Positions 3,983 through 51,620 of a stretch of 64,000 bases of DNA are shown one piece after another; positions within the stretch are counted from its first letter, which is position 1, and each line of letters begins with the position of its first letter. The DNA is taken from the IMG/VR virus record IMGVR_UViG_3300044712_001255, positions 1 to 64,000 of that record; one strand, 5' to 3'. A program made the translations under genes and the position numbers. The notes below the pieces were generated by a model, which was not told where the DNA came from, ran no database searches, and saw nothing but the letters and a program-made list of their open reading frames with translations.

Positions 3983-5925
3983 TACTTCCTCACGATCTTG
4001 GGCTCTGACATTGCGATCTTGATGCTTGGCGTGTGTTGGCCTGTCCACTTGCTGTGGAACACATGACCACCGGTGAGCGCTGACAGAGAAATAGCCAACA
4101 TCTTAATCATTTCATCCGTGACATCTGCCCATGGCACACCGAAAAACATGTTATTCTCAGCGGTATCTGCTGATGACTTATTGTAGAGGTCGTTCCAATG
4201 ATTCTGCCAATAGTCTCGATATAAACGTATCTTCCGTTCCATGTCATACCAGCTGTAGTGGAAGACACTCGGTACATCACGAACAATCTGGTTCATCACT
4301 TCCTGGTACTTCTGCAATGCACCGTCCTGATTATTGAGCGCAGCTTGTCGCAGCCCCTCAAGTTCAGCGTTCCAAAATGTGATGTGTGGAATTGGATCAC
4401 CAGTTTCGGTGTGAATTAGATCACATCCGTCAGTTCCTGGGCGAGCGTAAAGTTCTCCCTTGTCATCTTGCGCACGTAACTGACGTGGAATACCGTGAGT
4501 GATATACGGCTTGTTACGTGTCAAACGCCACTTCCACGGAGTGACGTCGATTCGTACCTTGTCTGCGCTTCCCCAATACTCAACAACAGGGAGACATACG
4601 ACATCAATTCCTGACGTTATTGATCGGCAAACTTCCTTCACCTTTTCTACGTGATCTTCATGGACAATTTCATCGCTGTCCATTTGCCAACAAAATTCCT
4701 TTGTGCACATTTTGCGAGCTTCGGCTTTTTGCATCCCGTCAAAGATTGCATGTCGAGGCGCAGCCCAATCACGAGGAATTTGTTTCACTTTCAAACGTTC
4801 GATTACAGACCCGTCGATTTCGTTAAATCGTTGGTACCCAAGCGCCATTTGTTGTAGAACGCTCCACGTTCCGTCTGTTGATCCACCGTCTACGACGCAA
4901 ACCTCATCGCAAAACTGCAACATAGATTCAATACATTCACGAAATGGATATCCTTGTTGCTTGCAATTGTAAGTCGTTGTGTATCCAGAAATGCTGGGCA
5001 CGTAATCGATGATCTTCTTGATGCTGTTCCAAAAAAGACCTGGAGCTGCATAGAGATATTGTTCGATCTCCTCTAAGTTGTCTGTTGCAAACCACTCTTC
5101 ATCCTTGTGCTGAACGTAGTTGTTAAGCTGCAGCTGACAACCTAAAAGTTTTGCTTCGATGACAAGACGTGGACATGTGTCAGCGCCCATAGGTAAATAC
5201 ACGAGTCCTGTACACGCTGCCAGCGTTGCAAGTAATTCATTGTAAGGCTTGTTCCAAACGACTGTGGTAGGCTTGTCATTGTCCTTTGCCCACTGCATTG
5301 CTTGGGAATACCCCTTAATTGGAGAATTTGAGCCAAGTACTACCCACTCCGGCGAGCGTTCCTTCCCGGCTGAAAGTTCACGTAACACTTTAATCTTTGC
5401 AAGCGTCTCAGCAGAGAGCACTGAGCTCAAGACGATATTGTCTCGTTCTGCGAGAAACGGAAACATTGTATGATAGCGAGCCTGCTGAGCTTCTGACATC
5501 CAATAAAGAGCTTGGGCGCCTAAGAAGAACGCAGATACCATCTTTCCATGCATTTGGTTGTGGCAATCGCATGGAACTTGTTCTGCGGCGAAATGAATCT
5601 CAGGTGACCTGTACTTGCAATATTTGTAGTCATATTCAAGCACTGCGTACTTGATGTTTCCAACGATAGTTGGAATCAACTGCATATTCATCTGCGTCCA
5701 ATTGCCGAAGATCCAAAACTTTTGGTGTGCTTCCTGCAAAAGCTTGATTGTTAGGTCCTTTGAATGAAGCTTAAACACCTTGAAAGGTGAAGAATCGATC
5801 AAAGCCTGAGTTGTTAGTTCGGCACCACCCACGTAGTCTTCAACAAACATGTCTGATACAACGACAATGTCTGTGTCTTCTGGGATGCTGATAGAATCGA
5901 ATAGTTGCTGGGATATGTTGAACAC
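3982..5925 (-). CDS. Bifunctional GT4-like + GT2 glycosyltransferase fusion
   Basis: N-half: SDMFVEDYVGGAELT...DTCPRLVIEAKLLGC. C-half: GYTTTYN...VVDGGSTDGT...QMDSDEIV. Start set at GTG 5925 from promoter geometry; ORF track start is 5982. Confidence 0.85.
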   Translation of the reverse strand: MFNISQQLFDSISIPEDTDIVVVSDMFVEDYVGGAELTTQALIDSSPFKVFKLHSKDLTIKLLQEAHQKFWIFGNWTQMNMQLIPTIVGNIKYAVLEYDYKYCKYRSPEIHFAAEQVPCDCHNQMHGKMVSAFFLGAQALYWMSEAQQARYHTMFPFLAERDNIVLSSVLSAETLAKIKVLRELSAGKERSPEWVVLGSNSPIKGYSQAMQWAKDNDKPTTVVWNKPYNELLATLAACTGLVYLPMGADTCPRLVIEAKLLGCQLQLNNYVQHKDEEWFATDNLEEIEQYLYAAPGLFWNSIKKIIDYVPSISGYTTTYNCKQQGYPFRECIESMLQFCDEVCVVDGGSTDGTWSVLQQMALGYQRFNEIDGSVIERLKVKQIPRDWAAPRHAIFDGMQKAEARKMCTKEFCWQMDSDEIVHEDHVEKVKEVCRSITSGIDVVCLPVVEYWGSADKVRIDVTPWKWRLTRNKPYITHGIPRQLRAQDDKGELYARPGTDGCDLIHTETGDPIPHITFWNAELEGLRQAALNNQDGALQKYQEVMNQIVRDVPSVFHYSWYDMERKIRLYRDYWQNHWNDLYNKSSADTAENNMFFGVPWADVTDEMIKMLAISLSALTGGHVFHSKWTGQHTPSIKIAMSEPKIVRK

Positions 5926-5931
5926 GTTGCT

Positions 5932-5960
5932 ATCGTACACCGTGATGATGTTTGTGTTCA
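5932..5960 (-). promoter_or_regulatory. Sigma70-like promoter TGAACA-17-TACGAT, 6 nt upstream of GTG 5925 (predicted leaderless)
   Basis: Hexamers and spacing read directly; the -35 is identical to that of the primase promoter. Confidence 0.65.
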
Positions 5961-5995
5961 ACCCGCGTCGACGCGGTTTCATCTAGATTTAAATT

Positions 5996-6024
5996 TTGAC
6001 CATTTGCCTTGTCCAGAGTAGAAT
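5996..6024 (+). promoter_or_regulatory. Sigma70-like promoter TTGACC-17-TAGAAT
   Basis: Near-consensus hexamers with 17-nt spacer, upstream of the GroEL-like gene. Confidence 0.7.
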
Positions 6025-6072
6025 CTGATCTAGAGTCTCTTAAAGAGATTTTAAGCTTCTGCTGAGACACAA

Positions 6073-9821: not shown

Positions 9822-9864
9822 TTGTTTGTGTAGAAAATGATCGTGCTAGGTAATGTTGTTCAAC

Positions 9865-11511
9865 ATGCCTAAGCACGATCTTCTGAAATATTTCCCGTTC
9901 TCAACAATCAGGCCACAACAACAAGAAGCAATTGCGTTTGCATTGAATGCATTTGAATCTGGCAAACGATTTGTCGTGTTGGAACTTGGCACAGGCGTTG
10001 GCAAGTCAGCCACAGGAGTCTGTATTTCTAGATACATGCGTTCTCACAGCGTGGCTGACACAACGTATGGCGTTGGATCGTGGTTTCTAACAACGCAAAA
10101 GATCCTGCAGCAGCAATACATGCGTGATTTTGGTGGTCCACGTCCTACTGACATGAAGACCATCAAGTCTTCTACGAGTTTCTGTTGCCAGATGCATGAT
10201 GATTCTGAGGAGTGTGACAAGCTGACATGCGGTGAAATTCACCGTCTGATGAACGCAAATCAGATTTTCAAAATGCTGTACAAGACCTGCGTGACAAAGT
10301 GCAGGTATAAGCAAGAAAAGTCTGTTTGGATGGAGGCATTGGAAAGCTGCACAAATTATGCATACTTCTTTGCAGAATCACAGTATGCAAAGCAAATTCA
10401 GCCTCGAGAGTTGCTTGTGCTTGATGAGGCGCACACCATAGAAGAACAGCTCAGTAGTTTCGTTGAAATCTCCGTTAGCGAGAGATTCGCTCAGCAACAT
10501 CTTGATGTGAAAATGCCACGTTCATTCGCTAACATGGCGGCTGCGGTGTCATGGATTCGATCAAAATATCTCAAGGCATTGCGCAAAAAGGTGGAAGAAA
10601 TGGGCAAAATGCTTGAGGATATGACGGATGCTGCCAAAAAGATAAAGTCATTTCAAGACTTTGCGCAACGCCACGACCTTCTAGATAAACACATGTGTAA
10701 GGTGAACAGGTTCCTCAAGTCGTACAGAGAAGAAAATTGGGTGATGAACGAGGTGGCACCGCAAGGTAAGGCAATGCGGAAGTTGGAGTTTAAACCTGTT
10801 GATGTGAGTGAATTTGCTCATGATCATCTTTTCAACTTCGGAAAGCACGTTTTGCTGATGTCGGCGACAATTCTTGACAAAGACGTGTTCTGCCGTTCTC
10901 TTGGCATAGACGTTACGCAGACAGAATTTTTGAGAATTGGTTCTCCATTTGATGTTTCAAACAGACCGATTCACATTATGCCCGTTGCGTCTATGTCAAA
11001 GGCTCGTATTGACGAGTCTCTTCCAACGATGGTAGAAGCTGTGAAATTCATTGTTGATCAACACAAGAATGACAAGGGAATTATTCACTGCGTAAATTTC
11101 AAAATAGCACAGTATTTGATTGAGCATTGTGGAAATCCGCGTCTTGTGACACATGACTCTACAAATCGAGATCTGATCTTGAAGATGCACGAAGAGTCAC
11201 CGCAACCATCAGTACTTGTCAGTCCTTCTATGATGGAAGGCGTTGATCTAGCTGATGACAAGAGCAGATTCCAGATTCTGTGCAAAGTTCCATTCCCGTA
11301 CTTGGGTGACAAAGTTATTCAGAAACGTATGCAACGTGATTCACGTTGGTATGACTACAAGACAGTAATGATGACAATCCAGGCGTTCGGTCGTTCTGTA
11401 AGAAATGAGGATGATCATGCAATTTCGTATGTGATAGATTCTGATTGGGAACGTTTCTTCCGTAAGACGAAAAGTATGTTTCCTGACGAGTTCATTCAGG
11501 CGATACGTTGA
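9865..11511 (+). CDS. DinG/Rad3/XPD-family SF2 helicase
   Basis: RPQQ Q-motif, LGTGVGKS Walker A, LVLDEAH, MSATI, EGVDL, QAFGRSVR, plus a Cys cluster. ORF track start is 9853; ATG 9865 follows TGTAGA-16-TAATGT. Confidence 0.92.
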   Translation: MPKHDLLKYFPFSTIRPQQQEAIAFALNAFESGKRFVVLELGTGVGKSATGVCISRYMRSHSVADTTYGVGSWFLTTQKILQQQYMRDFGGPRPTDMKTIKSSTSFCCQMHDDSEECDKLTCGEIHRLMNANQIFKMLYKTCVTKCRYKQEKSVWMEALESCTNYAYFFAESQYAKQIQPRELLVLDEAHTIEEQLSSFVEISVSERFAQQHLDVKMPRSFANMAAAVSWIRSKYLKALRKKVEEMGKMLEDMTDAAKKIKSFQDFAQRHDLLDKHMCKVNRFLKSYREENWVMNEVAPQGKAMRKLEFKPVDVSEFAHDHLFNFGKHVLLMSATILDKDVFCRSLGIDVTQTEFLRIGSPFDVSNRPIHIMPVASMSKARIDESLPTMVEAVKFIVDQHKNDKGIIHCVNFKIAQYLIEHCGNPRLVTHDSTNRDLILKMHEESPQPSVLVSPSMMEGVDLADDKSRFQILCKVPFPYLGDKVIQKRMQRDSRWYDYKTVMMTIQAFGRSVRNEDDHAISYVIDSDWERFFRKTKSMFPDEFIQAIR

Positions 11512-12231: not shown

Positions 12232-12492
12232 TCACAGTTCTAACGACTCTCTTATCTTAGTCTTGATCCCTTTCTCAATTTGACAAATTCTCATACGAGA
12301 TACATTGAACATTTGTCCAATCTTTTCAAGGGTATAGGGTCCGTCTTCTGCGGCTATGACGCTGCAATTTTGTTTCTCTTCCATAGAGACCCAATGACTA
12401 CACGTTTTACGTTCGCAAGAAATGCAACGATCTCTGTGCTCTTTGAAACAAGTCGTGCCGACTACGGGAAGTTTTTTGATAGTTGTTGGCAT
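12232..12492 (-). CDS. Cys-rich protein with sigma70 region-4-like HTH
   Basis: YTLEKIGQMFNVSRMRICQIEK matches the region 4.2 TLxEIGxxxxVSRERIRQIE pattern. Confidence 0.75.
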   Translation of the reverse strand: MPTTIKKLPVVGTTCFKEHRDRCISCERKTCSHWVSMEEKQNCSVIAAEDGPYTLEKIGQMFNVSRMRICQIEKGIKTKIRESLEL

Positions 12493-28527: not shown

Positions 28528-28529
28528 CG

Positions 28530-28558
28530 GTTTATCTACGAAGTACTGGTGTTACAGT
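28530..28558 (+). promoter_or_regulatory. Promoter GTTTAT-17-TACAGT, 6 nt before ATG 28565 (predicted leaderless)
   Basis: Hexamers and spacing read directly; no SD. Confidence 0.6.
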
Positions 28559-28564
28559 GGCATC

Positions 28565-29149
28565 ATGTTAGTTTTAGGCATTGATGCTTCTACAACAATC
28601 ACTGCGTTTTCTGTGATTGACGCAAACAACAATTATGATCCCAAGAAGCATTTTGTTGACTACTGGGTTGAAGACTTTAAGGGGTGTTCTACGTTTTGGG
28701 AGAAGTGTGACAAGATTGTTGCCAAGTTAGTTGACATAGACAATGATATCAAGAACTGCGCGCCAGCATTTGATAAACCAAAAATTGAGGCGTTCTACAT
28801 AGAAGAACCCATGAAGCGATTCTCACCTGGAATGTCATCTGCCGAAACCATAAGCACGTTGCAACGTTTCAATGGCATCGTATGTTACCTAACGCGTGAA
28901 AGATTTGGTATTGACGTGAAGTATGTCAACGTGTCAGCTGCACGTAAGGCGTCTGGTGTTCGTGTTGTGCAGACTAAAAAGGATCCATTGGGTCGTAATG
29001 CAAAACATCAGACTTTTGATCACATGCTTGTCAACGATTTGTCTCACATTCAATGGCCAACAAAGAAATCAGGTAAGCCTAAGGACTGGGCATATGATGT
29101 CACAGATTCATATGTGGTAGCTCGCGGTGGCAGTATACTGAACAAGTAA
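28565..29149 (+). CDS. RuvC-like Holliday junction resolvase
   Basis: VLGIDAST, FYIEEP and YDVTDSYVVA supply the acidic tetrad. Confidence 0.82.
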   Translation: MLVLGIDASTTITAFSVIDANNNYDPKKHFVDYWVEDFKGCSTFWEKCDKIVAKLVDIDNDIKNCAPAFDKPKIEAFYIEEPMKRFSPGMSSAETISTLQRFNGIVCYLTRERFGIDVKYVNVSAARKASGVRVVQTKKDPLGRNAKHQTFDHMLVNDLSHIQWPTKKSGKPKDWAYDVTDSYVVARGGSILNK

Positions 29150-29167
29150 ACAGACGCAGTTTACAAT
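29139..29167 (+). promoter_or_regulatory. Promoter TGAACA-17-TACAAT, 6 nt before GTG 29174 (predicted leaderless)
   Basis: Hexamers and spacing read directly; no SD. Confidence 0.65.
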
Positions 29168-29173
29168 TGTTAC

Positions 29174-30142
29174 GTGCATACTCTCACCGAAAAGGTGAAC
29201 TTCATTCGGCGTGTTTTTGGGCAATATGAACTTGCTCGAAATGAAAAGAACATTGCCGTTAAGTGCCCATTTTGTAGCAAGATTACGTCAGACAAGAAAA
29301 AGCTTGTCATACGATTGTCTGACGATGCGTGTCATTGTTGGGTTTGTGGGTATAAATCACGTTCTCTTGTGAAGGTTCTTAAAAAGAAATCTCCCAATGA
29401 CGTACGTGAATACGTTGACAAGTTCTATCCAGAACTTCGAACGAAGTACCAAAAACAAGATGTTGCTCCACAACAAGAAGTTGTGCAGTTACCAAAAGAT
29501 TTTGTGTTGTTGCAGCTTGCTTCAATGTCAAACCCAGATTACCGAGCCGTGAAGAAGTACGTCGAAGATCGCAACATTTCAGATAGAGACATGTGGTTCT
29601 ATAAGCTTGGTGTTTCTAACGAACCACGTTGGCAACGTCGAGTGATAATTCCTTCTTTTGACGACATTGGGCTGTTAAATGATTACGTAGGTAGAGCAAT
29701 CAACCCGAACGTCTATAACAAATATGATTCTCCAACTGACGATAAGCTCTCGCACATTTTCAATGAGATGTACATTGATTGGAAAAAGCAGCTAGTTCTT
29801 TGCGAGGGACCATTTGACATGATGAAATGTGGTGAGAACACTGTTCCACTATTGGGTTCTGAGCTGAATGAGGAATCATTGTTATTTGAACGTATCATAG
29901 TCAACAATACGCCGATTGCTTTGGCACTCGATTCTGATATGCTTGAAACAAAGGTTCCTAAGATGTCACGAGTCCTTCAAGAATATGATATAGATGTGAA
30001 GGTTGTTCGTGTGCCAGATGATCCTGGTGCTCTTACGAAAGAAGAATTTCAAGAGTGTTTGATGAACGCAACGCCGCTTACGTGGGAGTCAAATCTCAAG
30101 AGCAGGCTCAAAAAGATGGCGTCATTACGTTTGACACTTTGA
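29174..30142 (+). CDS. DNA primase (gp61/DnaG-like, Zn finger + Toprim)
   Basis: CPFC...CHCWVCG zinc finger; LCEGPFD and LALDSD Toprim motifs. Confidence 0.9.
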   Translation: MHTLTEKVNFIRRVFGQYELARNEKNIAVKCPFCSKITSDKKKLVIRLSDDACHCWVCGYKSRSLVKVLKKKSPNDVREYVDKFYPELRTKYQKQDVAPQQEVVQLPKDFVLLQLASMSNPDYRAVKKYVEDRNISDRDMWFYKLGVSNEPRWQRRVIIPSFDDIGLLNDYVGRAINPNVYNKYDSPTDDKLSHIFNEMYIDWKKQLVLCEGPFDMMKCGENTVPLLGSELNEESLLFERIIVNNTPIALALDSDMLETKVPKMSRVLQEYDIDVKVVRVPDDPGALTKEEFQECLMNATPLTWESNLKSRLKKMASLRLTL

Positions 30143-30144: not shown

Positions 30145-30173
30145 TGTAAATGGTTGAATTTACTTGGTAGTAT
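30145..30173 (+). promoter_or_regulatory. Promoter TGTAAA-17-TAGTAT, 8 nt before ATG 30182
   Basis: Hexamers and spacing read directly. Confidence 0.5.
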
Positions 30174-30181
30174 GGAGTCCG

Positions 30182-33100
30182 ATGGTACGTGTAGCTCACC
30201 TTGCTGATGTTCATTTTAGGGGTTTGTCACGGCACTCAGAATACAGAGAAGTATTTGATGCCTTCGCAGAAGATGCTAAGCAGGCGAAGGTAGATGCTAT
30301 ATTAGTAGCAGGCGATATTTTTCACACGAAAACAACGGGTATAAGCCCTGAGTACATTCAAGAGATTTCTCGTTGGATGACACTGTTATCTACAATTGCA
30401 CCAACGCATATTACGCTTGGTAATCACGACGGCAACTTGGTCAATATGTCACGTCAAGATGCCGTGACGCCCATCTATGACATCGTTCAAGCAAACGTAC
30501 CTGCGGGTCGTCTGTTTTTGCACAAGTTTAGTGGCGTGTATGATTTCTTGCCTGGCATAAAACTGTGCGTATTGAGTATCTTTGATGAAGACAACTGGAA
30601 GGTAGTGAATCCGGTTGACGGACACATCAACATTGCAACTTATCATGGTCCTGTCAAAGGTGCTCAGACTGAATCAGATTGGACCATTGACGATGGGTTG
30701 TTGGTGGATTCGTTCTCTAGATACGATTTCGCAATGCTGGGTGATATTCACAAGACACAATTCCTTGGATATCGAAAAACTAAGAACGGTGAAAAGCCAT
30801 GGATAGCGTACCCCGGGTCAACGCTTCAGCAGACATACAAGGAATCGCTAGACCACGGTTATTTGCTATGGAACATTGAATCACGTGATGATTTTAATGT
30901 TGAGTTTCGCATTCTTCCCAATCCACGTCCATTTGTAACGCTGAATTGGCATGATGACGTTGAAGCAACTGCCAATGATGCGTTTAAGTACGAAAAGGGA
31001 TCTAGATTTCGTATCAAAAGCGATGTGCATCTTACGCAAAAAGACATTCAGGGATTGTCATCAATCCTCAAGAATGATCGTAACGCATCTGAGGTTACTT
31101 TCAAAATTGACGTGGCTGAGAAGATAAGTGCGCAGGCTCAATATGGTTCTCTTGACTTAGCACACGAAGATATTAGAAATCCTGAGGCTATTGTGAAACT
31201 TATTATGAAGTTTCACGAAAACACAAAGCTTGATGACGATGAGTCAAAGCAAATCAAAGACTTAGTACGAACATACCTCCAGCAAGCTACCTTAGGAGAT
31301 GAAGTATCTCGAGGTTCAAAGTGGTCTCTGCGTCAGCTTAAGTTTGATAACACGTTCACATATGGGCCAAATAACGTAATCAATTTTGACAAGTTGTCTG
31401 GTGTGACTGGAATTTTTGGGCCAAATCGTGTTGGTAAATCTTCAATACCTGGAACTCTTGCATATGTGCTGTACAATGATACAGACCGTGGTTCGATAAA
31501 GAATCAATACGTGTGTAACATTCGCAAGCCCTTTTGTTATGGAAGGGCGTTGATTGCGGTAAATGGCGTTGATTATGTGATTGAACGACAAACAACAAAG
31601 TTTGAGTCAAAGAGCGGCGTTGAACATGCTATCACTTCATTGAATGCTTGGCGAGTTCTACCAAATGGTGAGCTTGAAGATCTTGCTGGTGAAGCCCGCA
31701 ATGATACTGAAAAGGTGATTCGTAGGTTACTTGGTACGTCTGATGATTTTTTGATTACCGCGTTGTCGTCACAGGGTGATGCTGATTCATACGTCAAGTA
31801 TGGGTCAACAAGACGCTGGCAAGTACTTGCAAGATTTCTTGACATTGATGTCTTTGCCAAGATGGCAGATCTTGTGAAAGAAGACATCAAGGTTGCAAAG
31901 GCACAACTACGTAACTACCCAGAAAAGAATTGGTCTGAGCTTGCCGTTGCGCTAAAGGCCGATTTTAAAAGCTGTGATCACGATCTAGCACAAAAGGTAG
32001 CAGATTTGCTCGTTGTGCAGAATCAACTTGCGTTGTTGCGAGCGCAACTGGCAAAATACGATGACATCACGCCAGTTACTGAAGATGAACTTTCTTCTGC
32101 TAAGACAAAGAAAGTAACTCTCACAAGTAGATTAGGAAAGCTACAACGGCAAATTGACACGTGCAACGCATCAATTAAAACTATCAATGATGATAGTGAT
32201 AAACTACGAGATGAATTGCAAACATATGATGTTGAAACTCTCAACACAAGATTGGTATTATTGAAGTCGCTACGTGAACAACTTGCAACGTTGCGTCACA
32301 ATAGTGAAAAGCAACAAACGGCATCATCTACTGCAAAGAAATCTGTGAAGTTGCTTGATACTGTTCCTTGTGGAGACACGTTTCCAACGTGCAGATTCAT
32401 CAAAGATGCTCACGAAAATCGTAAAAATTTAGCTACGCTTGAAGCTACGACAAAGGCTGCGCTCGATGCAGTCTCAGAAGCTGAAGACACATTACAGACT
32501 CTAATAGCTGAAAGGGTTGAAGACGCGTTGTCTAACATTCAACGAATTCAGGAACAAATTAAGACATTCGATATTGATCTCTTGAAAAAAGAGAATGAAA
32601 TCGTTCGCCTGCAAGCTGAGTTTGATGCAACCACGATCGCCCTACGTGATGCTACGGCTGCTCTTGGCAAGCTTGAAGAGTCTGTACACAATGATCAGAA
32701 CACGGCAATCATCGACCTACAACAACAAATAGATGCTCTCGATGCTGAGGCTCATGCAATTGATAAAGAAAAACTTGCGCTTGCTTCTCGAAAGGGACGC
32801 ATCGAATCAGACGTATTGAAGTTAGCAGATGAAAGACGTCAACGCGAAAAGATTCTAAAGAGCATGAAGGTACATGAGTTGTTGTTCTTGGCGTTTTCAA
32901 AGAAGGGCATTCCAAGAATGATCATCAGCACGCAGTTGCCTGCGATCAATGCAGAGATTTCAAAAATCTTGTCTGGCATCGTGAATTACACTGTTGAATT
33001 TGAAAATGATGAAGATTCTGACAAGCTTGATCTATACCTCAACTACGGAGATTCTCGTCGTATCATTGAGCTTGGTTCTGGCATGGAGAAGATGATGGCG

Positions 33101-33349
33101 TCAATAGCCATTCGTGTCGCAATGACAAATGTATCTTCTTTACCGCGACCAGATATTTTCATCATTGATGAAGGATTTGGTAATCTTGATGAGAGTAATC
33201 TTGAATCATGCACTCGCTTGTTGCGGTCACTCACCCAATACTTCAGGAATGTGCTTGTCATTAGCCATGTTGATGCTATCAAGGATGCAATTGATAACAT
33301 GATCGAGATTACAAGGGACGAACGTGAGTCTCGAGTGGTGTATGATTGA
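30182..33349 (+). CDS. Fused Mre11/SbcD nuclease - Rad50/SbcC ATPase (gp47-gp46-like)
   Basis: HLADVH, AGDIFH, GNHD, GDIH; GPNRVGKS Walker A; coiled coil; GSGMEK signature; IIDEGFGNLD Walker B; all in one frame. Confidence 0.93.
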   Translation: MVRVAHLADVHFRGLSRHSEYREVFDAFAEDAKQAKVDAILVAGDIFHTKTTGISPEYIQEISRWMTLLSTIAPTHITLGNHDGNLVNMSRQDAVTPIYDIVQANVPAGRLFLHKFSGVYDFLPGIKLCVLSIFDEDNWKVVNPVDGHINIATYHGPVKGAQTESDWTIDDGLLVDSFSRYDFAMLGDIHKTQFLGYRKTKNGEKPWIAYPGSTLQQTYKESLDHGYLLWNIESRDDFNVEFRILPNPRPFVTLNWHDDVEATANDAFKYEKGSRFRIKSDVHLTQKDIQGLSSILKNDRNASEVTFKIDVAEKISAQAQYGSLDLAHEDIRNPEAIVKLIMKFHENTKLDDDESKQIKDLVRTYLQQATLGDEVSRGSKWSLRQLKFDNTFTYGPNNVINFDKLSGVTGIFGPNRVGKSSIPGTLAYVLYNDTDRGSIKNQYVCNIRKPFCYGRALIAVNGVDYVIERQTTKFESKSGVEHAITSLNAWRVLPNGELEDLAGEARNDTEKVIRRLLGTSDDFLITALSSQGDADSYVKYGSTRRWQVLARFLDIDVFAKMADLVKEDIKVAKAQLRNYPEKNWSELAVALKADFKSCDHDLAQKVADLLVVQNQLALLRAQLAKYDDITPVTEDELSSAKTKKVTLTSRLGKLQRQIDTCNASIKTINDDSDKLRDELQTYDVETLNTRLVLLKSLREQLATLRHNSEKQQTASSTAKKSVKLLDTVPCGDTFPTCRFIKDAHENRKNLATLEATTKAALDAVSEAEDTLQTLIAERVEDALSNIQRIQEQIKTFDIDLLKKENEIVRLQAEFDATTIALRDATAALGKLEESVHNDQNTAIIDLQQQIDALDAEAHAIDKEKLALASRKGRIESDVLKLADERRQREKILKSMKVHELLFLAFSKKGIPRMIISTQLPAINAEISKILSGIVNYTVEFENDEDSDKLDLYLNYGDSRRIIELGSGMEKMMASIAIRVAMTNVSSLPRPDIFIIDEGFGNLDESNLESCTRLLRSLTQYFRNVLVISHVDAIKDAIDNMIEITRDERESRVVYD

Positions 33350-33352
33350 TTA

Positions 33353-33637
33353 GTGAAAATAAGCAATGACAGAATCGTTGTAGAACACGATAGTCACCTA
33401 ACGATCTATCCAGATGAGATGGGTGAATTGATTCCCGCCGCGTGTCCTGTGTGTGATCATTTGCTACGTACGTCTGATGATGAAATGATGTACGTAAAAT
33501 TTGGTTGCTGTGATGCGTGTGCAGCGGAATGGGCCTGGCGTGACACGAAATCGTGGAATGATGGAATTCGTCCTACAAAAGACGATATTGAAAAGCGATG
33601 CGCCTGTAGACCAAAGTTGTTTTTAAGCGTGGCGTGA
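33353..33637 (+). CDS. Small zinc-finger-like protein
   Basis: CPVC...CCDAC; preceded by TATGAT-N6-GTG. Confidence 0.7.
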   Translation: MKISNDRIVVEHDSHLTIYPDEMGELIPAACPVCDHLLRTSDDEMMYVKFGCCDACAAEWAWRDTKSWNDGIRPTKDDIEKRCACRPKLFLSVA

Positions 33638-33653: not shown

Positions 33654-33671
33654 TTGCAGGAGTCACAGCAC

Positions 33672-46736: not shown

Positions 46737-46760
46737 TAGAAACAACCACTTAGGTGGTCA

Positions 46761-46791
46761 AAGGGCTCGGGCAACCGAGCCCTTGTCGTTT
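46761..46791 (+). terminator. Rho-independent terminator after MCP
   Basis: AAGGGCTCGG-GCAA-CCGAGCCCTT, a perfect 10-bp stem with GNRA loop followed by GTCGTTT; a smaller ACCAC-TTAG-GTGGT hairpin lies at 46745-46758. Confidence 0.85.
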
Positions 46792-46793
46792 AA

Positions 46794-46822
46794 TGTACTA
46801 GACACAACGTACCATGTATAAT
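46794..46822 (+). promoter_or_regulatory. Promoter TGTACT-17-TATAAT, 6 nt before ATG 46829 (predicted leaderless)
   Basis: Perfect -10 hexamer; no convincing SD. Confidence 0.7.
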
Positions 46823-46828
46823 TGAGAC

Positions 46829-47692
46829 ATGATCAAGTGTAAAGAGTGTGGATATGAATGCTCGGCACAAAATGCGTTAGGCTATCACTTACGTTCTCAT
46901 GGAATGTCTTACGATGATTACGTTGTGAAACATGATCACAATGGTGTTTGGCCAATATGCTCATGTGGCAAACGATTGCAACGTAAAAAGGGAGGGTTTA
47001 GCAAACATTGCGGCAAATCATGTGCGTCAAAAGGCGCTAACAACGGAATGTTTGGTAAGAAGGGCGACGATTCTCCGAACTTTGGGTTGATTCGTTCAGA
47101 GCAACAACGTAAGAATTATTCGAAAGGCGCAAAGAAACGTTGGGAATTACACGGCGATAACCTTCGATCTATGATGAAGACACCAGAATATCGACAATCC
47201 CAAAGAGATGCAAACATAATATCGTATGCAACAACAGATCGTGCTGAGAAAACATCTCAATCTGTTAGAAAATTTTGGCAATCTGATTCTGAGATCACTA
47301 AACAACGTCGTAAAGAAGCGTCTAACAGAGCGATTCAATTGCTAGAGATTGGAAAGATTGGTCCACAAGCTCCGTTCAAGGCAGAGTGGATATTAAATCC
47401 TTTCACAAATCAACAAGAATACATGCATTCGTCTTGGGAAACTTTGTTCTTAAATGAATGCATAAAATCAAACTTTCCAGTTACAAAGGCGCATTTAATT
47501 CGTATTGCATATCTTTTGCCAGATGGTAGCGAACATATTTACGTACCTGATTTTGTTTCAATCGATGGTTCGAATTTGTTGATTGAAATCAAGGGTCGAC
47601 GTACAGAAGTTGATGATATCAAATTCAAAGCTTGCAAAGCATGGTGTGTTCAAAATGGATATGAAGTTGTAATGATTGGTGATGCACGATAA
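46829..47692 (+). CDS. Putative free-standing homing endonuclease (C2H2 Zn finger, NUMOD3-like, C-terminal PD-(D/E)xK)
   Basis: CKEC...HLRSH; CSCG...HCGKSC; NGMFGKK; HSSWE...YVPDF...IEIKG. Confidence 0.75.
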   Translation: MIKCKECGYECSAQNALGYHLRSHGMSYDDYVVKHDHNGVWPICSCGKRLQRKKGGFSKHCGKSCASKGANNGMFGKKGDDSPNFGLIRSEQQRKNYSKGAKKRWELHGDNLRSMMKTPEYRQSQRDANIISYATTDRAEKTSQSVRKFWQSDSEITKQRRKEASNRAIQLLEIGKIGPQAPFKAEWILNPFTNQQEYMHSSWETLFLNECIKSNFPVTKAHLIRIAYLLPDGSEHIYVPDFVSIDGSNLLIEIKGRRTEVDDIKFKACKAWCVQNGYEVVMIGDAR

Positions 47693-47717
47693 TTCGTGTG
47701 TTAGATATTGGGTAACC

Positions 47718-48287: not shown

Positions 48288-48292
48288 AAAGC

Positions 48293-49015
48293 ATGGGTTT
48301 GTTGTCTGAAGGGCTTATGGAGCCAGAGGCGATTATCGAAGCGTATATCAAGCAACATGCTTCTGAACTTGCGACATTGCAAGGATGGTTGAGCATTGGA
48401 ACATTTCTACGAAGAGTAGCATCCGAATATTTTACGCCCAAGAAACCAGCTGAGCCACGAGTGAATAGACCATTAAACGCACGTCAGCAACAGGCGTCAA
48501 GAAGCATTTATGAAGTATCAGCCGAGGAACAAAGAATCGCTGAAAGAATTGTCAAGAACAGCGCAAAGATCGCCACTCACTTGTGGGGCATTGTACAAAT
48601 AGCCTCAAAGAAACAAGCAACCGAGATAGACGGCGCAATATCAAATGCGTTAAATACGATGTGGCCAATAATCATAGGGCGACAAAATTCATCATTAGAT
48701 AAGGTAAAATCTTACTTGCAATTGTTATTGTCTGAGGCAGACAATGGTGACAAGGGCGATGATAAGAAGACAACTTCTGGTCCATCAAAAGATCGTGACA
48801 CTGGCGAAATTCTATATCACCTTGACATGGCAACTCGTCACCTTGATGTGTTGGTGGATTATACGCTTGTGATGGGTCATGAAGAAGAGATCGTAAGCAT
48901 TTCTTCGTCTGTCCAAGAACTTGCCCAGAGATTACGTTCTGAGCTTGAGGCTGCTCGTGTTCCTCTTGATGAACGTGAGCCAGAAGGCGGAGAACCGCCC
49001 GCTGGTCCTGGGTGA
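48293..49015 (+). CDS. Hypothetical protein, possible internal head protein
   Basis: N-terminal LLSEG and LME motifs. Confidence 0.7.
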   Translation: MGLLSEGLMEPEAIIEAYIKQHASELATLQGWLSIGTFLRRVASEYFTPKKPAEPRVNRPLNARQQQASRSIYEVSAEEQRIAERIVKNSAKIATHLWGIVQIASKKQATEIDGAISNALNTMWPIIIGRQNSSLDKVKSYLQLLLSEADNGDKGDDKKTTSGPSKDRDTGEILYHLDMATRHLDVLVDYTLVMGHEEEIVSISSSVQELAQRLRSELEAARVPLDEREPEGGEPPAGPG

Positions 49016-49061
49016 TACATCTTTCATACAGTAGTGTATAGTCTCTTCAATTAGGAGAGAC

Positions 49062-49469
49062 ATGAGTTTGAAGCTTAAACTGACGCCGGCTGAGACGCTT
49101 GCGCTTTATGACATTGTAACGTTGTTAGATCATGCCAAGGATCTTCCTGAGGATCACCCGCTTGTAGCAGAAACTATCTTGGGAGGCGTGAGACGTAAGC
49201 TTCGATTTCTGATTGAGAAGACTCTTAATACTAGTAAGAGCGACGAGGCAGAACCATTTTACGTTGACGCTGGGAACTTGAAAAAGGAGAAACTTGAGGA
49301 GTGGTTGTCAATTCAACACGAAAAGCTTGCGTCATTGCAAGATAAGCGTGTGGGTCTACCACAACAAGCCGCAGACCAATCTGTAGATGTTGTTCTGGAC
49401 GACCTACAGAATCGACCAGATTATCCAAAGAACTTTGTTCGTCGCGACAAGAAACGTCGTGGACGATAG
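49062..49469 (+). CDS. Hypothetical protein abutting tmRNA
   Basis: AGGAGA SD; basic tail RRDKKRRGR; stop codon 3 nt before the tmRNA. Confidence 0.75.
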   Translation: MSLKLKLTPAETLALYDIVTLLDHAKDLPEDHPLVAETILGGVRRKLRFLIEKTLNTSKSDEAEPFYVDAGNLKKEKLEEWLSIQHEKLASLQDKRVGLPQQAADQSVDVVLDDLQNRPDYPKNFVRRDKKRRGR

Positions 49470-49472
49470 AAT

Positions 49473-49830
49473 GGGACCGACAGGATTCGACGGAGGTAAT
49501 AACTAAACAATTGCACGCAGGCGGTGCTCGCGTCCGCCTCAAACAATGTGAGCAAACGTTCAGTTGCAAACGACAACGCAACAGTTCTTCGGGCTGCGGC
49601 TTGAGAACCGATCCTAAGATGAGATAGTTCTTGTAATCTGTGGATCGTCAACCCACCAGAGCTTGGCCAAGCGGTAATTGTGTGATAGGCCGATGGCGAG
49701 AAAAATACACACAGGCCTCCTTTGGCAGCACAAAGGAACTCACCCGTCAGGGATATGATGGGCAAGCGTGTGAATGAAATTGAATAGAGAAGACTTGCGG
49801 ACGGTGGTTCAAATCCACCCGGTTCCACTA
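49473..49830 (+). ncRNA. ssrA: tmRNA (transfer-messenger RNA), tag ANDNATVLRAAA
   Basis: 5' GGGACCG pairs with 3' CGGTTCC-A including the G3-U wobble; GGATTCGAC D-loop mimic; T arm GGTGG-TTCAAAT-CCACC; pk1 GCAC/GTGC with AGGCG/CGCCT; tag ORF 49566-49604. Confidence 0.97.
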
Positions 49831-49856
49831 TGATCAATTTTCATTAGTTCCACCAT

Positions 49857-49885
49857 TTTTACGTTTCATAAGAGAAGCGTACAGT
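49857..49885 (+). promoter_or_regulatory. Promoter TTTTAC-17-TACAGT
   Basis: Same form as 8171, 11514 and 28530. Confidence 0.5.
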
Positions 49886-49901
49886 TATTAGCGAGGACAC
49901 T

Positions 49902-50087
49902 ATGTCAGCACAAACAGATATTTTGGCAGAGAAGATCAGAGAAATTGAAACGCAGCTAACGGAGGCTAAGACTTCCGGGAATGCGGATCGCATCACAGAG
50001 TTGCAGACACGCAAGGATGATCTCGCAAAGCAGCTTGCTACTGCAAATTCATCGTTGAATGAGGGACGTCAACTTTTGAAGGGGTAA
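49902..50087 (+). CDS. Small helical-hairpin protein
   Basis: GAGGA SD; 61 aa. Confidence 0.75.
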   Translation: MSAQTDILAEKIREIETQLTEAKTSGNADRITELQTRKDDLAKQLATANSSLNEGRQLLKG

Positions 50088-50088
50088 T

Positions 50089-50316
50089 ATGCCACAGAAT
50101 CCTCCCGTAGATCTATATCAGCCGCTTGTTGCAAATCGTGTTGGGCCACCGCCTGTTGTGATTCGTGCGATTGTAACACCTCATCAGGCAGGCCTCGTAG
50201 AAGGTGTGCCAGCGTCAACTACGCGTGGTGAACATTACGTGTTGCTGTCAATTCTACCAACGGAACTGCGTCGTCGTGTTGAGCTTGCAGTACAGACAGT
50301 TACGCAGGGTCAGTGA
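50089..50316 (+). CDS. Hypothetical protein
   Basis: Starts 1 nt after the upstream stop; 75 aa. Confidence 0.7.
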   Translation: MPQNPPVDLYQPLVANRVGPPPVVIRAIVTPHQAGLVEGVPASTTRGEHYVLLSILPTELRRRVELAVQTVTQGQ

Positions 50317-50333
50317 TACAGTGATATGATACT

Positions 50334-50342
50334 TGATACGAT
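50334..50342 (+). promoter_or_regulatory. Extended -10 TGA-TACGAT, 6 nt before ATG 50349 (predicted leaderless)
   Basis: Motif and spacing read directly. Confidence 0.5.
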
Positions 50343-50348
50343 GCCAGG

Positions 50349-50939
50349 ATGGCGTATCATGGGTATTTGCAACTGGTAAAGGAATTTTTATATTCCAAGG
50401 AAACACCTACGTTTCTTGAAATAGGTGTTGATAACGGCGCCTCATTGGTGCCGTTGGTCGTTTTCCTTACACGCACAAAGCAACGTTTCTTCGTATCGGG
50501 AATTGATGTTCGATTTCATGAGCATCTAAAGATCATTCTTGGTAACATCGACTTGTCAGAGGGACAAGTCATTCAGATGTTCGAAGAGAGTAGCCTCAAG
50601 GTTCTTCCAGCGCTTGTAGAAGCAAAGGCAAAGTTTGATCTTCTACTCATAGACGGCGATCACAACTATTACACAGTTGCGCAGGAATTGCAATATGTGC
50701 CAGACCTCACCCACGATCATAGCATGATTATCATTGATGATTATGCAGGTCGATGGTCAGATAAGGACCTTTGGTATTCGCAGCGAGACGGATATCAGAA
50801 TGTGACATCTGCAACAACACCCGTTGATACTGAAAAACACGGTGTGAAAGCAGCTGTTGATGAATTTGTTGCTGCACATCCAGAGTGGAAGATTCATACA
50901 CCAATTCCTGGAGAGCCTGTTCTACTCGTTAAACAGTGA
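50349..50939 (+). CDS. Class I SAM methyltransferase (Methyltransf_24-like)
   Basis: FLEIGVDNGAS and FDLLLIDGDHNY...IIDDY. Confidence 0.88.
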   Translation: MAYHGYLQLVKEFLYSKETPTFLEIGVDNGASLVPLVVFLTRTKQRFFVSGIDVRFHEHLKIILGNIDLSEGQVIQMFEESSLKVLPALVEAKAKFDLLLIDGDHNYYTVAQELQYVPDLTHDHSMIIIDDYAGRWSDKDLWYSQRDGYQNVTSATTPVDTEKHGVKAAVDEFVAAHPEWKIHTPIPGEPVLLVKQ

Positions 50940-50957
50940 TCTCTCAAGGCATACAAT
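50929..50957 (+). promoter_or_regulatory. Promoter TTAAAC-17-TACAAT, 6 nt before ATG 50964 (predicted leaderless)
   Basis: Motif and spacing read directly; no SD. Confidence 0.55.
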
Positions 50958-50963
50958 AGACGT

Positions 50964-51620
50964 ATGCATAAGGTAATTGAATACGTTGATGACTCTGATA
51001 ATGAGCGCCAGACTGAAAGTTGGCAATCAAAGCGCATCGAACAGTACGTGTCTATTGACACTGCGTCCGGACCAATTTTGGTGCGTTCTTCTGCGATAGA
51101 TGAAGCAGTCAGTCGACCTGCTACTGGAAATTCTCCCGACATTCACAATGAGCAAAAGCTATTTCAGCGTCAACAGGCAGACAAGGAATTTCAGACTTTT
51201 CGCGAGGCGGTGAATGAAAGCGTAAAGACTGTTCCCGCTATTGTGTCCGAACAGACTATTACTGATCTACGGGCGCCAATCTATTCAAATATTACAAGCG
51301 ATGATGTTCCTACAGCGCTACACGTTAAGTGTGTAAAGAGGAATGATATGTCTGAAGACACGCTGTTTGATTGGCAGAATCAGACGTATGTGCACCTTGA
51401 ATCTATGCCACCCGAGCTTCGTGATGTGGTTGTTGCGTACACAAGATTGTTGGTGATGAATGACATCGCAGTAAGGATTGGGTCAAAGAACGTTTACTTC
51501 GAAAAGCTAACTGTTGCCGTTGATAACTTTCGTCAAGCAATTCAGTCTCTAAATCGTGCGCATGATCTGCACGAGTATGCCACGCTGGATGAGATCTATG
51601 AGCAGTGTGGCGTACGGTAA
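50964..51620 (+). CDS. Hypothetical protein
   Basis: 218-aa ORF with promoter support. Confidence 0.75.
   Translation: MHKVIEYVDDSDNERQTESWQSKRIEQYVSIDTASGPILVRSSAIDEAVSRPATGNSPDIHNEQKLFQRQQADKEFQTFREAVNESVKTVPAIVSEQTITDLRAPIYSNITSDDVPTALHVKCVKRNDMSEDTLFDWQNQTYVHLESMPPELRDVVVAYTRLLVMNDIAVRIGSKNVYFEKLTVAVDNFRQAIQSLNRAHDLHEYATLDEIYEQCGVR

What the first reader, a model, noticed from the sequence alone, without database searches (positions are those of the whole stretch)
5925..50964. Recurrent TAnnnT-N6-start architecture predicts leaderless mRNAs for non-structural genes
Seen: a -10-like hexamer sits exactly 6 nt before the start codon, with no convincing SD, at seven genes: 5925(-) TACGAT, 28565 TACAGT, 29174 TACAAT, 33353 TATGAT, 46829 TATAAT, 50349 TACGAT and 50964 TACAAT. 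Five have a -35-like box 17 nt upstream, and TGAACA occurs twice. Two more genes (9865, 30182) have 8-nt spacing. Most structural genes instead show SD motifs or stop-start overlaps. Established: this spacing puts the transcription start at or beside the start codon, and leaderless mRNAs initiate on 70S ribosomes independently of the anti-SD. Inference: the phage routes replication, recombination and modification genes through leaderless initiation, which constrains the likely host and may protect them from translation shutdown.
Basis: partly seen in the sequence, partly recalled or inferred. Interest (0 to 1): 0.7.

Follow-up and report, generated by a model that had tools for sequence, protein, structure and literature searches.

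The report
Leaderless-mRNA promoters in a jumbo phage
An uncultivated 324-kb phage and its closest relative place a promoter -10 box exactly six bases before the start codon of about 45 to 55 genes, so these genes are predicted to be made as mRNAs with no leader and no ribosome-binding site; this is real and lineage-wide, but it is a known kind of gene architecture.

Summary
All seven TAnnnT-N6-start sites are at the stated coordinates.

- **Whole genome (324,468 bp):** TAnnnT lies exactly 6 nt before the first start codon of 40 of 429 crude genes, against 6.5 at other spacings (P=7e-19).
- **Test without gene calls:** GTG-N20-TAnnnT is followed by ATG at N6 in 40 of 193 cases, against 4.3 (P=3e-25).
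- **Consensus:** GTG(T/A)A -35 element, 17-nt spacer, G-rich -15 to -13, TAnnnT, pyrimidine at -1, then A of ATG at +1. This is sigma-70 geometry that places the transcript start on the AUG.
- **Start codons:** the predicted leaderless genes use ATG in 43 of 45 cases.
- **Gene classes:** DNA-metabolism genes and an array of small ORFs at 221-254 kb carry the architecture. Terminase, portal and capsid genes have Shine-Dalgarno (SD) sites.
- **Relatives:** the closest relative (190 kb, proteins 50-65% identical) shows the same enrichment (33 vs 3.8), the same consensus, and shared status at orthologues.

No RNA data could test the 5' ends. The host is unresolved. The idea of protection from translation shutdown is untested. 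The phage has no RNA polymerase of its own. It encodes an RpoD-like sigma lacking region 4.2, and a separate small protein that carries region 4.2.

The parts
5923..5961 (-). Promoter plus start of the glycosyltransferase gene: -35-like TTGAACA (5955-5961), -10 TACGAT (5932-5937), 6-nt spacer, GTG at 5925-5923. The ORF is open up to an ATG at 5982, but that extension runs through a palindrome and through the promoter.
   Evidence: the G001 orthologue keeps TTGAACA-N17-TAGAAT with a 9-nt spacer
28529..28567 (+). Promoter plus start of the RuvC-like resolvase gene: TGn-TACAGT (28553-28558), N6, ATG at 28565. The -35 element is weak.
   Evidence: (PHROG match from residue 1)
29138..29176 (+). Promoter plus start of the DNA primase gene: CTGAACA (29138-29144), 17-nt spacer, TACAAT (29162-29167), N6, GTG at 29174. 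The promoter lies inside the 3' end of the upstream gene.
   Evidence: the same N6 architecture occurs at primase orthologues in loci L007, L008/9, L016, L018/19, L020 and L036/37
33317..33355 (+). Promoter plus start of a 94-aa ORF at the head of the terminase module: TATGAT (33341-33346), N6, GTG at 33353.
   Evidence: (PWM score 13.6); the G001 orthologue has TATGAT-N6-ATG
46793..46831 (+). Promoter plus start of the HNH-type endonuclease gene, just after the capsid gene and a hairpin: TATAAT (46817-46822), N6, ATG at 46829.
   Evidence: the G001 orthologue has TACAAT-N7-GTG
50313..50351 (+). Promoter plus start of the methyltransferase gene (Methyltransf_24): GTGATA -35-like, TGn-TACGAT (50337-50342), N6, ATG at 50349.
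50928..50966 (+). Promoter plus start of a 218-aa ORF of unknown function: TAAACA, 16-nt spacer, TACAAT (50952-50957), N6, ATG at 50964.
   Evidence: (PWM score 12.4)
9828..9867 (+). Promoter of the DNA helicase gene: GTGTAG (9828-9833), 17-nt spacer, TAATGT (9851-9856), 8-nt spacer, ATG at 9865. The predicted +1 is at 9863, giving a 2-nt leader.
   Evidence: (PWM score 13.3 with +1 at 9863)
30168..30184 (+). Upstream region of the fused SbcD-SbcC gene: TAGTAT, then an 8-nt spacer containing GGAG, then ATG at 30182. Ambiguous; may be SD-led rather than leaderless.
   Evidence: (Metallophos match from residue 3)
12235..12492 (-). 86-aa protein with four N-terminal cysteines and a sigma-70 region 4.2 helix-turn-helix. 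Candidate -35-reading partner of the phage's truncated sigma.

Best explanation
The sites are sigma-70-family promoters whose -10 hexamer occupies -12 to -7 relative to the A (or G) of the start codon. Host core RNA polymerase, carrying a sigma-70-type factor, is therefore predicted to start the transcript on the start codon itself. That yields mRNAs with no 5' UTR and no Shine-Dalgarno site. By the established leaderless pathway, such mRNAs are bound at their 5'-terminal AUG by 70S ribosomes and initiator tRNA.

This is the standard way in which this jumbo-phage lineage expresses promoter-proximal genes. It applies to about 45-55 genes in the 324-kb genome. They comprise a dense array of small, probably early, ORFs at 221-254 kb and many DNA replication, repair, nucleotide and modification genes, including the seven in the window. 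Structural genes lie in longer operons and use SD sites.

**Shown here:** the motif, its rigid spacing, its statistics, the gene classes, and its conservation in a relative.

**Inferred:** that the 5' end lies exactly at the AUG, the mode of translation, the temporal classes, and which sigma reads the promoters (the host primary sigma or the phage's own).
For: - **Spacing:** TAnnnT at spacer 6 before first starts occurs 40 times vs 6.5 (P=7e-19).
- **Test without gene calls:** GTG-N20-TAnnnT is followed by ATG at N6 in 40 of 193 cases vs 4.3 (P=3e-25).
- **Logo of 72 sites:** T-34, G-33, A-31 and A-29 (17-nt spacer), G at -14/-13, G at -6, C at -1.
- **Position -1:** a pyrimidine in 43 of 45 leaderless genes vs 43% of SD genes, as expected for a pyrimidine(-1)/purine(+1) transcript start.
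- **PWM without the start codon:** of 47 hits scoring 14 or more, 31 have a start codon exactly at +1; 8 hits are expected by chance. Of the hits scoring 13 or more that face a gene, 40 of 47 predict a leader of 5 nt or less.
- **Start codon:** ATG in 43 of 45 leaderless genes vs 144 of 205 SD genes (P=1e-4).
- **Start codon placement:** 39 of 45 have no SD-led in-frame alternative within 120 nt, and 28 of 45 have no upstream in-frame start. Family matches begin at residues 1-5 for PNKP, ligase, UDP-glucose dehydrogenase, RuvC and SbcD.
- **Not stop codons:** the third base of the hexamer is mostly T or C.
- **Relative G001:** 33 vs 3.8 (P=3.5e-20), with the same consensus including GGTATACT-(G/A)AGACC-ATGG.
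- **Orthologues:** leaderless status is shared, 7 of 14 vs 2 of 58 (P=7e-5). The sequence between the boxes has diverged, for example at the ligase gene.
- **RNA polymerase:** none found in the genome, but one RpoD-like sigma is present.
- **Literature:** a TA-like box about 10 nt before the start is the accepted computational mark of bacterial leaderless genes (PMC3160421).
Against: - No transcript 5' ends are available. The only RNA run holding related sequence gave three read-sized contigs in the capsid gene.
- My gene calls are crude: longest ORFs scored by codon usage.
- The PWM was trained on N6 sites, which inflates its share of leaderless hits. The pattern test does not have this problem.
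- Three of the seven window sites use GTG, which is rare in the genome-wide leaderless set (2 of 45).
- The seven have weaker -35 elements than the genome consensus, and two of them score near zero on the PWM.
- Some promoters of the same type have leaders of 21-80 nt with SD sites, for example before the sigma operon.
- The host, and therefore its capacity for leaderless translation, is unknown.
Confidence: 0.8

Rival explanations
1. The promoters are real, but the phage's own sigma reads them, not the host primary sigma. The RpoD-like protein has regions 1.2 to 4.1 only. It would be completed by the separate 86-aa zinc-ribbon plus region-4.2 protein, which would read the unusual GTGTAG -35 element. 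Leaderless expression would then be a phage-autonomous programme.
For: - The sigma ends after region 4.1 (RpoD_Cterm profile positions 1-197 of 238).
- More than 100 metagenomic homologues at 50-61% identity carry only the r2 and r3 domains.
- The 86-aa protein matches Sigma70_r4 positions 19-50, and its recognition helix reads RMRICQ where the RpoD equivalent, recalled from memory, is RERIRQ.
- Both proteins are conserved in G001.
- The -35 consensus is GTG(T/A)A rather than TTGACA, and it is shared by G000 and G001.
- Complex test: score 0.46 against a best control of 0.00; the three runs agree in at least 86% of contacts; partner pLDDT at least 70. This is weak support. The mark was reached by 51 of 78 solved complexes and 2 of 108 mismatched pairs. 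At a score of 0.60 or below, however, only 5 of the 78 solved complexes passed, as did all 4 mismatches that passed out of 180.
Against: - The sigma operon itself sits behind a promoter of the same GTGTAC-N17-TATAAT type. Something else must therefore fire that promoter first.
- Presumed early genes must be read before any phage protein has been made, unless the factor is injected with the DNA.
- The complex score is in the range where passes are more often wrong than right.
- The word-based search found only 5 homologues of the small protein.
Confidence: 0.3
2. One reading: leaderless initiation is a dedicated route that shields replication and modification genes from a shutdown of translation, or from changes to the ribosome during infection.
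For: - There is a partition between leaderless non-structural genes and SD-led structural genes.
- The phage carries translation genes: IF1, tmRNA and 46 tRNAs.
- Precedent: Thermus phage phiYS40 makes leaderless middle and late mRNAs while IF2 rises and IF3 falls (PMC3594737).
Against: - Nothing in the sequence shows a shutdown mechanism. No IF3, S1 or S21 gene was found.
- The partition is explained more simply: genes that carry their own promoter are leaderless, and genes inside operons need an SD.
- The 33353 site heads the terminase module.
- Orthologues switch between leaderless and SD-led forms.
- About 10-13% leaderless genes is ordinary for hosts in which leaderless genes are common (PMC3160421).
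Confidence: 0.15
3. The start codons are mis-assigned, or the polymerase starts several bases away. In that case the mRNAs have leaders, or begin inside the ORF, and translation starts elsewhere.
For: - Gene starts were inferred, not measured.
- Start-site choice can vary by 1-2 nt. Several promoters have 5-, 7-, 8- or 9-nt spacers.
Against: - There is a sharp peak at exactly N6, with only small shoulders at N5 and N7.
- The -1 pyrimidine / +1 A rule holds.
- ATG is strongly preferred.
- Few alternative starts exist.
- Family profiles align from residues 1-5.
- The spacing is conserved in relatives.
Confidence: 0.1
4. The box is not a promoter. It is either a compositional by-product (for example the upstream gene's stop codon) or an RNA-level translation signal in read-through transcripts.
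For: - TA-rich words are common before gene starts.
- 26 of the 45 sites lie less than 40 nt from the upstream gene.
Against: - The third base of the hexamer is T or C in 52 of 72 sites, so the boxes are not TAA or TAG stop codons.
- A second element, GTG, sits at a fixed 20-nt distance.
- The geometry equals a sigma-70 promoter.
- The same box occurs with 21-80-nt leaders before other genes.
Confidence: 0.03

Closest known systems
Bacterial leaderless ('TA-led') genes, as in Actinobacteria and Deinococcus-Thermus (Zheng et al. 2011, PMC3160421)
   Same: A TAnnnT -10 box about 10 nt before the translation start, no SD, and an accepted reading as transcription starting on the start codon. Information-processing genes are over-represented in both.
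   Different: Here the architecture is in an uncultivated jumbo phage. It comes with a distinct GTG(T/A)A -35 element and a near-invariant GGTATACT-GAGACC-ATGG cassette repeated before an array of small ORFs. The 5' ends have not been measured.
Thermus phage phiYS40 (and, from memory, P23-45): phages with mostly leaderless transcripts (PMC3594737)
   Same: A large lytic phage that uses the host polymerase and expresses a whole class of genes as leaderless mRNAs.
   Different: In phiYS40 the middle and late genes are leaderless. Here the structural (presumed late) genes are SD-led, and the leaderless set is DNA-metabolism genes plus small presumed-early genes. There is no sequence relationship, and the host here is unknown.
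Jumbo phages with mapped transcriptomes: phiKZ (PMC8244752) and AR9 (PMC5312081)
   Same: Genome size class; many small early genes, each with its own promoter.
   Different: Those phages encode their own multisubunit RNA polymerases and have no leaderless transcripts. In phiKZ most 5' UTRs are 31-40 nt long; in AR9 they range from 26 to 491 nt. This phage has no detectable RNA polymerase and has sigma-70-type promoters set on the start codon.
Split or minimal phage sigma systems: T4 gp55 with gp33, and the RpoD-like and minimal sigmas of 'group 2' jumbo phages (PMC7824862)
   Same: A phage-encoded sigma that lacks a -35-reading region 4.2, plus a separate small helix-turn-helix protein that could occupy the beta-flap.
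   Different: Here the large piece is a near-complete RpoD (regions 1.2 to 4.1). The small piece is a recognisable region 4.2 fused to a Cys4 module, not a gp33 homologue. Their association has only weak computational support.

Membership tests
Bacterial leaderless (TA-led) gene architecture | A -10-like TAnnnT box at a fixed position about 10 nt upstream of the translation start, enriched genome-wide | tested here: met
   40 vs 6.5 at spacer 6 (P=7e-19). 40 vs 4.3 in the pattern test without gene calls. Replicated in G001, 33 vs 3.8.
Bacterial leaderless (TA-led) gene architecture | No Shine-Dalgarno element before the start | tested here: met
   No GGAG, GAGG or AGGA within -18 to -4 at the six window sites that were classified. 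The 6-nt spacer leaves no transcribed room for one.
Bacterial leaderless (TA-led) gene architecture | Transcript 5' end mapped on the start codon | not testable with these tools
   Only one RNA run holds related sequence. It gave three 150-nt contigs in the capsid gene and none at a promoter.
Bacterial leaderless (TA-led) gene architecture | Dependence on a 5'-terminal AUG (strong ATG preference) | tested here: met
   ATG in 43 of 45 leaderless genes vs 144 of 205 SD-led genes, Fisher P=1.2e-4. Three of the seven window sites use GTG.
Sigma-70-family promoter | -10 TAnnnT plus a -35 element at a 17±1 nt spacer | tested here: met
   The logo shows T-34, G-33, A-31 and A-29 at a 17-nt spacer. 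The element reads GTG(T/A)A, not TTGACA. For the seven window sites the match to TTGACA is only 3-4 of 6, and the E. coli-consensus scan is not enriched.
Sigma-70-family promoter | Start at a purine 7 nt after the -10 box, preceded by a pyrimidine | tested here: inconclusive
   The sequence fits: -1 is C or T in 43 of 45 sites and +1 is A. The actual start site has not been measured.
phiYS40-type phage programme (late genes leaderless) | Middle, late and structural genes transcribed as leaderless mRNAs | tested here: not met
   The portal and capsid genes carry SD sites. The terminase gene has no SD call and no TAnnnT box, and follows the upstream gene closely. The leaderless set is DNA metabolism genes plus small ORFs.
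phiKZ/AR9-type jumbo phage transcription | Phage-encoded RNA polymerase | tested here: not met
   No hit over cut-off for PF00940, PF00623 or PF00562 in the 324-kb record. The record is estimated 86% complete, and very divergent polymerases could escape Pfam.
Two-piece sigma factor | The large and small pieces bind each other and core polymerase | tested here: inconclusive
   Complex score 0.46 vs best control 0.00, weak support. Both genes are conserved in G001. There is no biochemical test.

The most novel reading that the evidence does not exclude
A lineage of uncultivated jumbo phages, represented by more than 100 metagenomic sigma homologues, carries a two-piece sigma factor: an RpoD-like body that ends after region 4.1, and a separate Cys4 plus region-4.2 protein. 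This factor reads a phage-specific promoter class (GTGTAG-N17-TAnnnT) set so that transcription begins on the AUG. Early and DNA-metabolism gene expression would then be independent of both the host sigma and the host anti-SD interaction.
Probability: 0.2. Interest if true: 0.8.

Novelty: new member of a known kind. Interest (0 to 1): 0.55.

Why it matters
- **Annotation.** It gives a rule for annotating this phage clade: the start is the ATG 6 nt after TAnnnT, and many ORFs should not be extended upstream. It also provides a ready-made promoter map of roughly 50-60 transcription units from sequence alone.
- **Jumbo-phage diversity.** It shows that jumbo phages are not uniform in how they express genes. 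Unlike phiKZ and AR9, this lineage depends on the host core polymerase, uses sigma-70-type promoters, and dispenses with 5' UTRs for a tenth or more of its genes.
- **Host range.** If the 5' ends are confirmed, the architecture limits hosts to bacteria whose ribosomes translate 5'-AUG mRNAs well.
- **Sigma factor.** The associated truncated sigma and free region-4.2 protein would be a testable new way of building promoter specificity.

Tried and rejected
- **RNA evidence.** Two run searches found DNA runs from rhizosphere samples and one freshwater metatranscriptome. Laying that run on 44700-50600 gave three read-sized contigs at 97-98% identity in the capsid gene and nothing at any promoter, so it carries no start-site information.
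- **Generic sigma-70 consensus scan.** On 28000-34200 and 46000-52000 the scan found no more sites than in shuffled sequence. It flagged only 29174 and 50964 among the seven.
- **Host assignment.**
  - No DNA match among cultured phages.
  - The helicase is at most 31% identical to those of Tunturiibacter, Xanthomonas and Bacillus jumbo phages.
  - No cultured phage has a close homologue of the sigma.
  - The phage IF1 is 51-64% identical to IF1 of Chloroflexota, Actinomycetota and Gemmatimonadota, which is too distant to name a host.
  - The pattern GTG-N20-TAnnnT-N6-ATG is not enriched over its reversed control in 12 assorted genomes or in 41 Chloroflexota genomes. The exception is one groundwater Chloroflexi MAG, 19 vs 7.
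  - A look-alike site on a Nitrospira MAG contig has no similarity to the phage.
  - The endolysin (PG_binding_1 plus Peptidase_M15_4) is uninformative.
- **Distant relatives.** G003 (sigma 32% identical) shows at most a weak signal, and G004 (391 kb, GC 33%) shows none. The feature therefore belongs to the close clade only.
- **RNA structure.** Leaderless and SD-led genes do not differ in predicted hairpin stability upstream of the promoter (P=0.28) or in the first 40 nt of the coding region (P=0.60). There is thus no evidence that each leaderless gene is insulated by a terminator.
- **Late promoter motif.** A k-mer search upstream of non-leaderless genes gave only SD words, tRNA fragments and a TGATAGTTA-like -10 variant with short leaders.
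- **Translation genes.** IF3, S1 and S21 were not found.

Full report
**Context.** The window is the first 64 kb of a 324,468-bp linear IMG/VR virus record. The record is estimated 86% complete, has 46.6% GC, and was assembled from a rhizosphere metagenome. It has no DNA match among cultured phages. Its helicase is at most 31% identical to those of any cultured jumbo phage. The window holds the terminase (34070), a portal with an HNH insert (36287), the major head protein (44829), an endolysin, PhoH, a tmRNA and many DNA-metabolism genes.

**The observation.** All seven sites are exactly as described: a TAnnnT hexamer, six bases, then ATG or GTG. None of the six that I classified has an SD-like word upstream. 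The -35 claim is weaker. The best matches to TTGACA are 3-4 of 6 at spacers of 16-18 nt, although TGAACA does occur twice at 17 nt. A generic E. coli-type promoter scan of these regions is not enriched over shuffles. Seven sites alone would therefore not be convincing.

**Genome-wide test.**
- I called 429 genes crudely, using long ORFs scored by codon usage. TAnnnT ends exactly 6 nt before the first start codon of 40 genes. The mean at the other spacings from 0 to 40 nt (5 and 7 excluded) is 6.5 (Poisson P=7e-19).
- Allowing any start candidate within 150 nt of the first gives 72 vs about 25.
- The signal survives without gene calls. Among all 13,118 ATG trinucleotides, spacer 6 gives 218 vs about 162.
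- The loose pattern GTG-N20-TAnnnT occurs 193 times and is followed by ATG at spacer 6 in 40 cases, against 4.3 at other spacers (P=3e-25).

**What the motif is.**
- The logo of the 72 sites has T-34, G-33, A-31 and A-29. A 17-nt spacer follows if the element is aligned to a -35 hexamer. G is enriched at -15 to -13. Then come TAnnnT at -12 to -7, G at -6, C at -1 and A at +1. This is sigma-70-family geometry, and the predicted start falls on the A of the ATG.
- Position -1 is a pyrimidine in 43 of 45 classified leaderless genes, against 43% of SD-led genes.
- The third base of the hexamer is mostly T or C, so the boxes are not upstream stop codons.
- A PWM that excludes the start codon finds 47 hits scoring 14 or more, where 8 are expected by chance. 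Of these, 31 have a start codon exactly at +1.
- Of the hits scoring 13 or more that face a gene, 32 have no leader, 5 are off by one base, 3 have a 2-5-nt leader, and 7 have longer leaders with SD sites. This PWM was trained on N6 sites, so these shares are upper estimates.

**Start codons.**
- Leaderless genes use ATG in 43 of 45 cases, against 70% in SD-led genes (P=1.2e-4). This fits the known need for a 5'-terminal AUG.
- 39 of 45 have no SD-led in-frame alternative within 120 nt, and 28 of 45 have no upstream in-frame start at all.
- Family profiles align from residues 1-5 for PNKP, DNA ligase, UDP-glucose dehydrogenase, the RuvC-like protein and SbcD.
- At 5925 the ORF can be extended to an ATG at 5982. 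That extension runs through a palindrome and through the promoter itself.

**Which genes.**
- In the window: glycosyltransferase, RuvC-like resolvase, primase, a 94-aa ORF ahead of the terminase module, an HNH-type nuclease, a methyltransferase and an unknown 218-aa protein. The helicase has a predicted 2-nt leader.
- Elsewhere: a PolA domain protein, FEN-type exonuclease, ThyX, PNKP, ATP-dependent ligase, methyltransferase, HNH nuclease and UDP-glucose dehydrogenase.
- 21 of the 45 lie in a 33-kb array at 221-254.5 kb. The array has 63 mostly small genes, 59 of them on one strand, and 52.6% GC. Its promoters are near-identical: GTG, about 19 nt, then GGTATACT-GAGACC-ATGG. I take this to be an early region, by analogy only.
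- Overall I classify 45 genes as leaderless, 205 as SD-led and 179 as neither. AGGA, GGAG and GAGG are enriched 5-9 nt before starts.
- The partition is best described by position. Genes that carry their own promoter are leaderless, and genes inside operons use SD sites.

**Relatives.**
- Primase homologues were found on 35 viral contigs. Several of them (proteins 28-64% identical, GC 28-48%) keep TAnnnT-N6-start at the orthologous start. One subgroup has a 9-nt spacer.
- The closest relative, G001, is 190,723 bp with 51% GC, and its sigma is 52% identical. Its whole sequence reproduces the enrichment (33 vs 3.8, P=3.5e-20) and the consensus, including the GAGACC/AAGACC-ATGG cassette.
- Among 72 reciprocal-best orthologue pairs, leaderless status is shared far more often than chance would give: 7 pairs shared, 7 leaderless in G000 only, 2 in G001 only, 56 neither (Fisher P=7e-5). 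The sequence between the boxes has diverged.
- Some orthologues have shifted to 7-, 9- or 10-nt spacers or to SD-led leaders.
- More distant relatives show a weak signal (G003) or none (G004).

**Transcription and translation machinery.**
- No T7-like or multisubunit RNA polymerase was detected.
- There is one RpoD-like sigma, at G000 263.7-264.5 kb. It aligns to RpoD only up to region 4.1, as do more than 100 metagenomic homologues, some of them on contigs of 324-370 kb. No cultured phage has a close homologue.
- A separate 86-aa protein (window 12235-12492, minus strand) combines four cysteines with a clear region-4.2 helix-turn-helix. It is conserved in G001.
- A complex prediction for the sigma C-terminus with this protein scored 0.46, against a best control of 0.00. 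The three runs agree in at least 86% of contacts, and partner pLDDT is at least 70. The tool rates this as weak support. The mark was reached by 51 of 78 solved complexes and 2 of 108 mismatches. At 0.60 or under, however, only 5 of the 78 solved complexes passed, as did all 4 mismatches that passed out of 180.
- Whether the host sigma or this possible two-piece sigma reads the GTG(T/A)A promoters is open. The sigma operon itself lies behind a promoter of the same type with a 25-nt SD-bearing leader, which argues that the host enzyme can fire at least some of them.
- The phage also encodes IF1, a tmRNA and 46 tRNAs, but not IF3, S1 or S21. Such genes are known in huge phages (PMC7162821).

**Comparison with what is known.**
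- A TA-like box about 10 nt before the start is the standard computational mark of bacterial leaderless genes. It is common in Actinobacteria and Deinococcus-Thermus and is present in several other phyla (PMC3160421).
- A phage precedent exists in Thermus phage phiYS40, where the middle and late genes are the leaderless ones (PMC3594737). The pattern here is the reverse.
- The two jumbo phages with mapped transcriptomes have no leaderless transcripts (phiKZ, PMC8244752; AR9, PMC5312081).
- The finding is therefore a new, well-supported instance of a known architecture in a new phage lineage, with an unresolved and possibly novel sigma arrangement attached.

**Limits.**
- No 5' ends were measured.
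- The host remains unknown.
- Temporal classes are inferred.
- The gene calls are my own.
- The proposed benefit, protection from translation shutdown, is untested.

Noticed in passing
window 12235-12492 (-) and G000 263717-264532 (+): The phage's RpoD-like sigma stops after region 4.1. A separate 86-aa protein carries four cysteines plus a region-4.2 helix-turn-helix whose recognition helix reads RMRICQ. Both are conserved in relative G001. This may be a two-piece sigma.
   Followed up: partly
window 49473-49830 (+): A phage-encoded tmRNA (Rfam RF00023, 97 bits) with tag peptide ANDNATVLRAAA. A promoter-like TAGAAT box ends right at the 5' end of the gene.
   Followed up: partly
G000 194660-194881 (+) (L055:1474-1695): A 74-aa homologue of translation initiation factor IF1 (PF01176, 72 bits). 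The closest bacterial IF1s, at 51-64% identity, are from Chloroflexota, Actinomycetota and Gemmatimonadota.
   Followed up: partly
G000 257926-283308 and 313007-313079 (-): An array of about 46 tRNA genes, plus a separate tRNA with anticodon TTA, which would read the UAA stop codon. No sign of stop-codon recoding was looked for.
   Followed up: no
G000 221000-254500: A 33-kb array of 63 mostly small ORFs, 59 on one strand, with 52.6% GC against 46.6% for the genome. Many are preceded by an almost identical GTG-N19-GGTATACT-GAGACC-ATGG cassette. The same cassette precedes a similar array in G001 at 38-52 kb.
   Followed up: partly
window 36287-39592 (+): The 1101-aa portal ORF contains an HNH endonuclease domain (residues 400-474), set between an N-terminal portal match at residues 214-325 and the main one at 701-872. 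It may be an inserted mobile element or intein-like insertion.
   Followed up: no
window 30182-33349 (+): The SbcD-like nuclease and the SbcC-like ATPase are fused in one 1055-aa ORF.
   Followed up: no
window 33640-33672, 49030-49062, 49870-49902: A second promoter arrangement: a TATAGT or TACAGT box, 6 nt, then a transcript that would begin at or just before the SD (AGGAG or GAGG). This gives leaders of only about 10-15 nt.
   Followed up: partly
window 5963-5976: A perfect 14-nt palindrome (CCGCGTCGACGCGG) in the divergent region between the glycosyltransferase gene and the gene at 6073, directly upstream of the -35 box. It may be an operator or a bidirectional terminator.
   Followed up: no
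window 44700-46360: A freshwater metatranscriptome run holds three read-sized contigs 97-98% identical to the capsid gene region. A close relative therefore occurs, and is possibly transcribed, in fresh water as well as in rhizosphere soil.
   Followed up: partly
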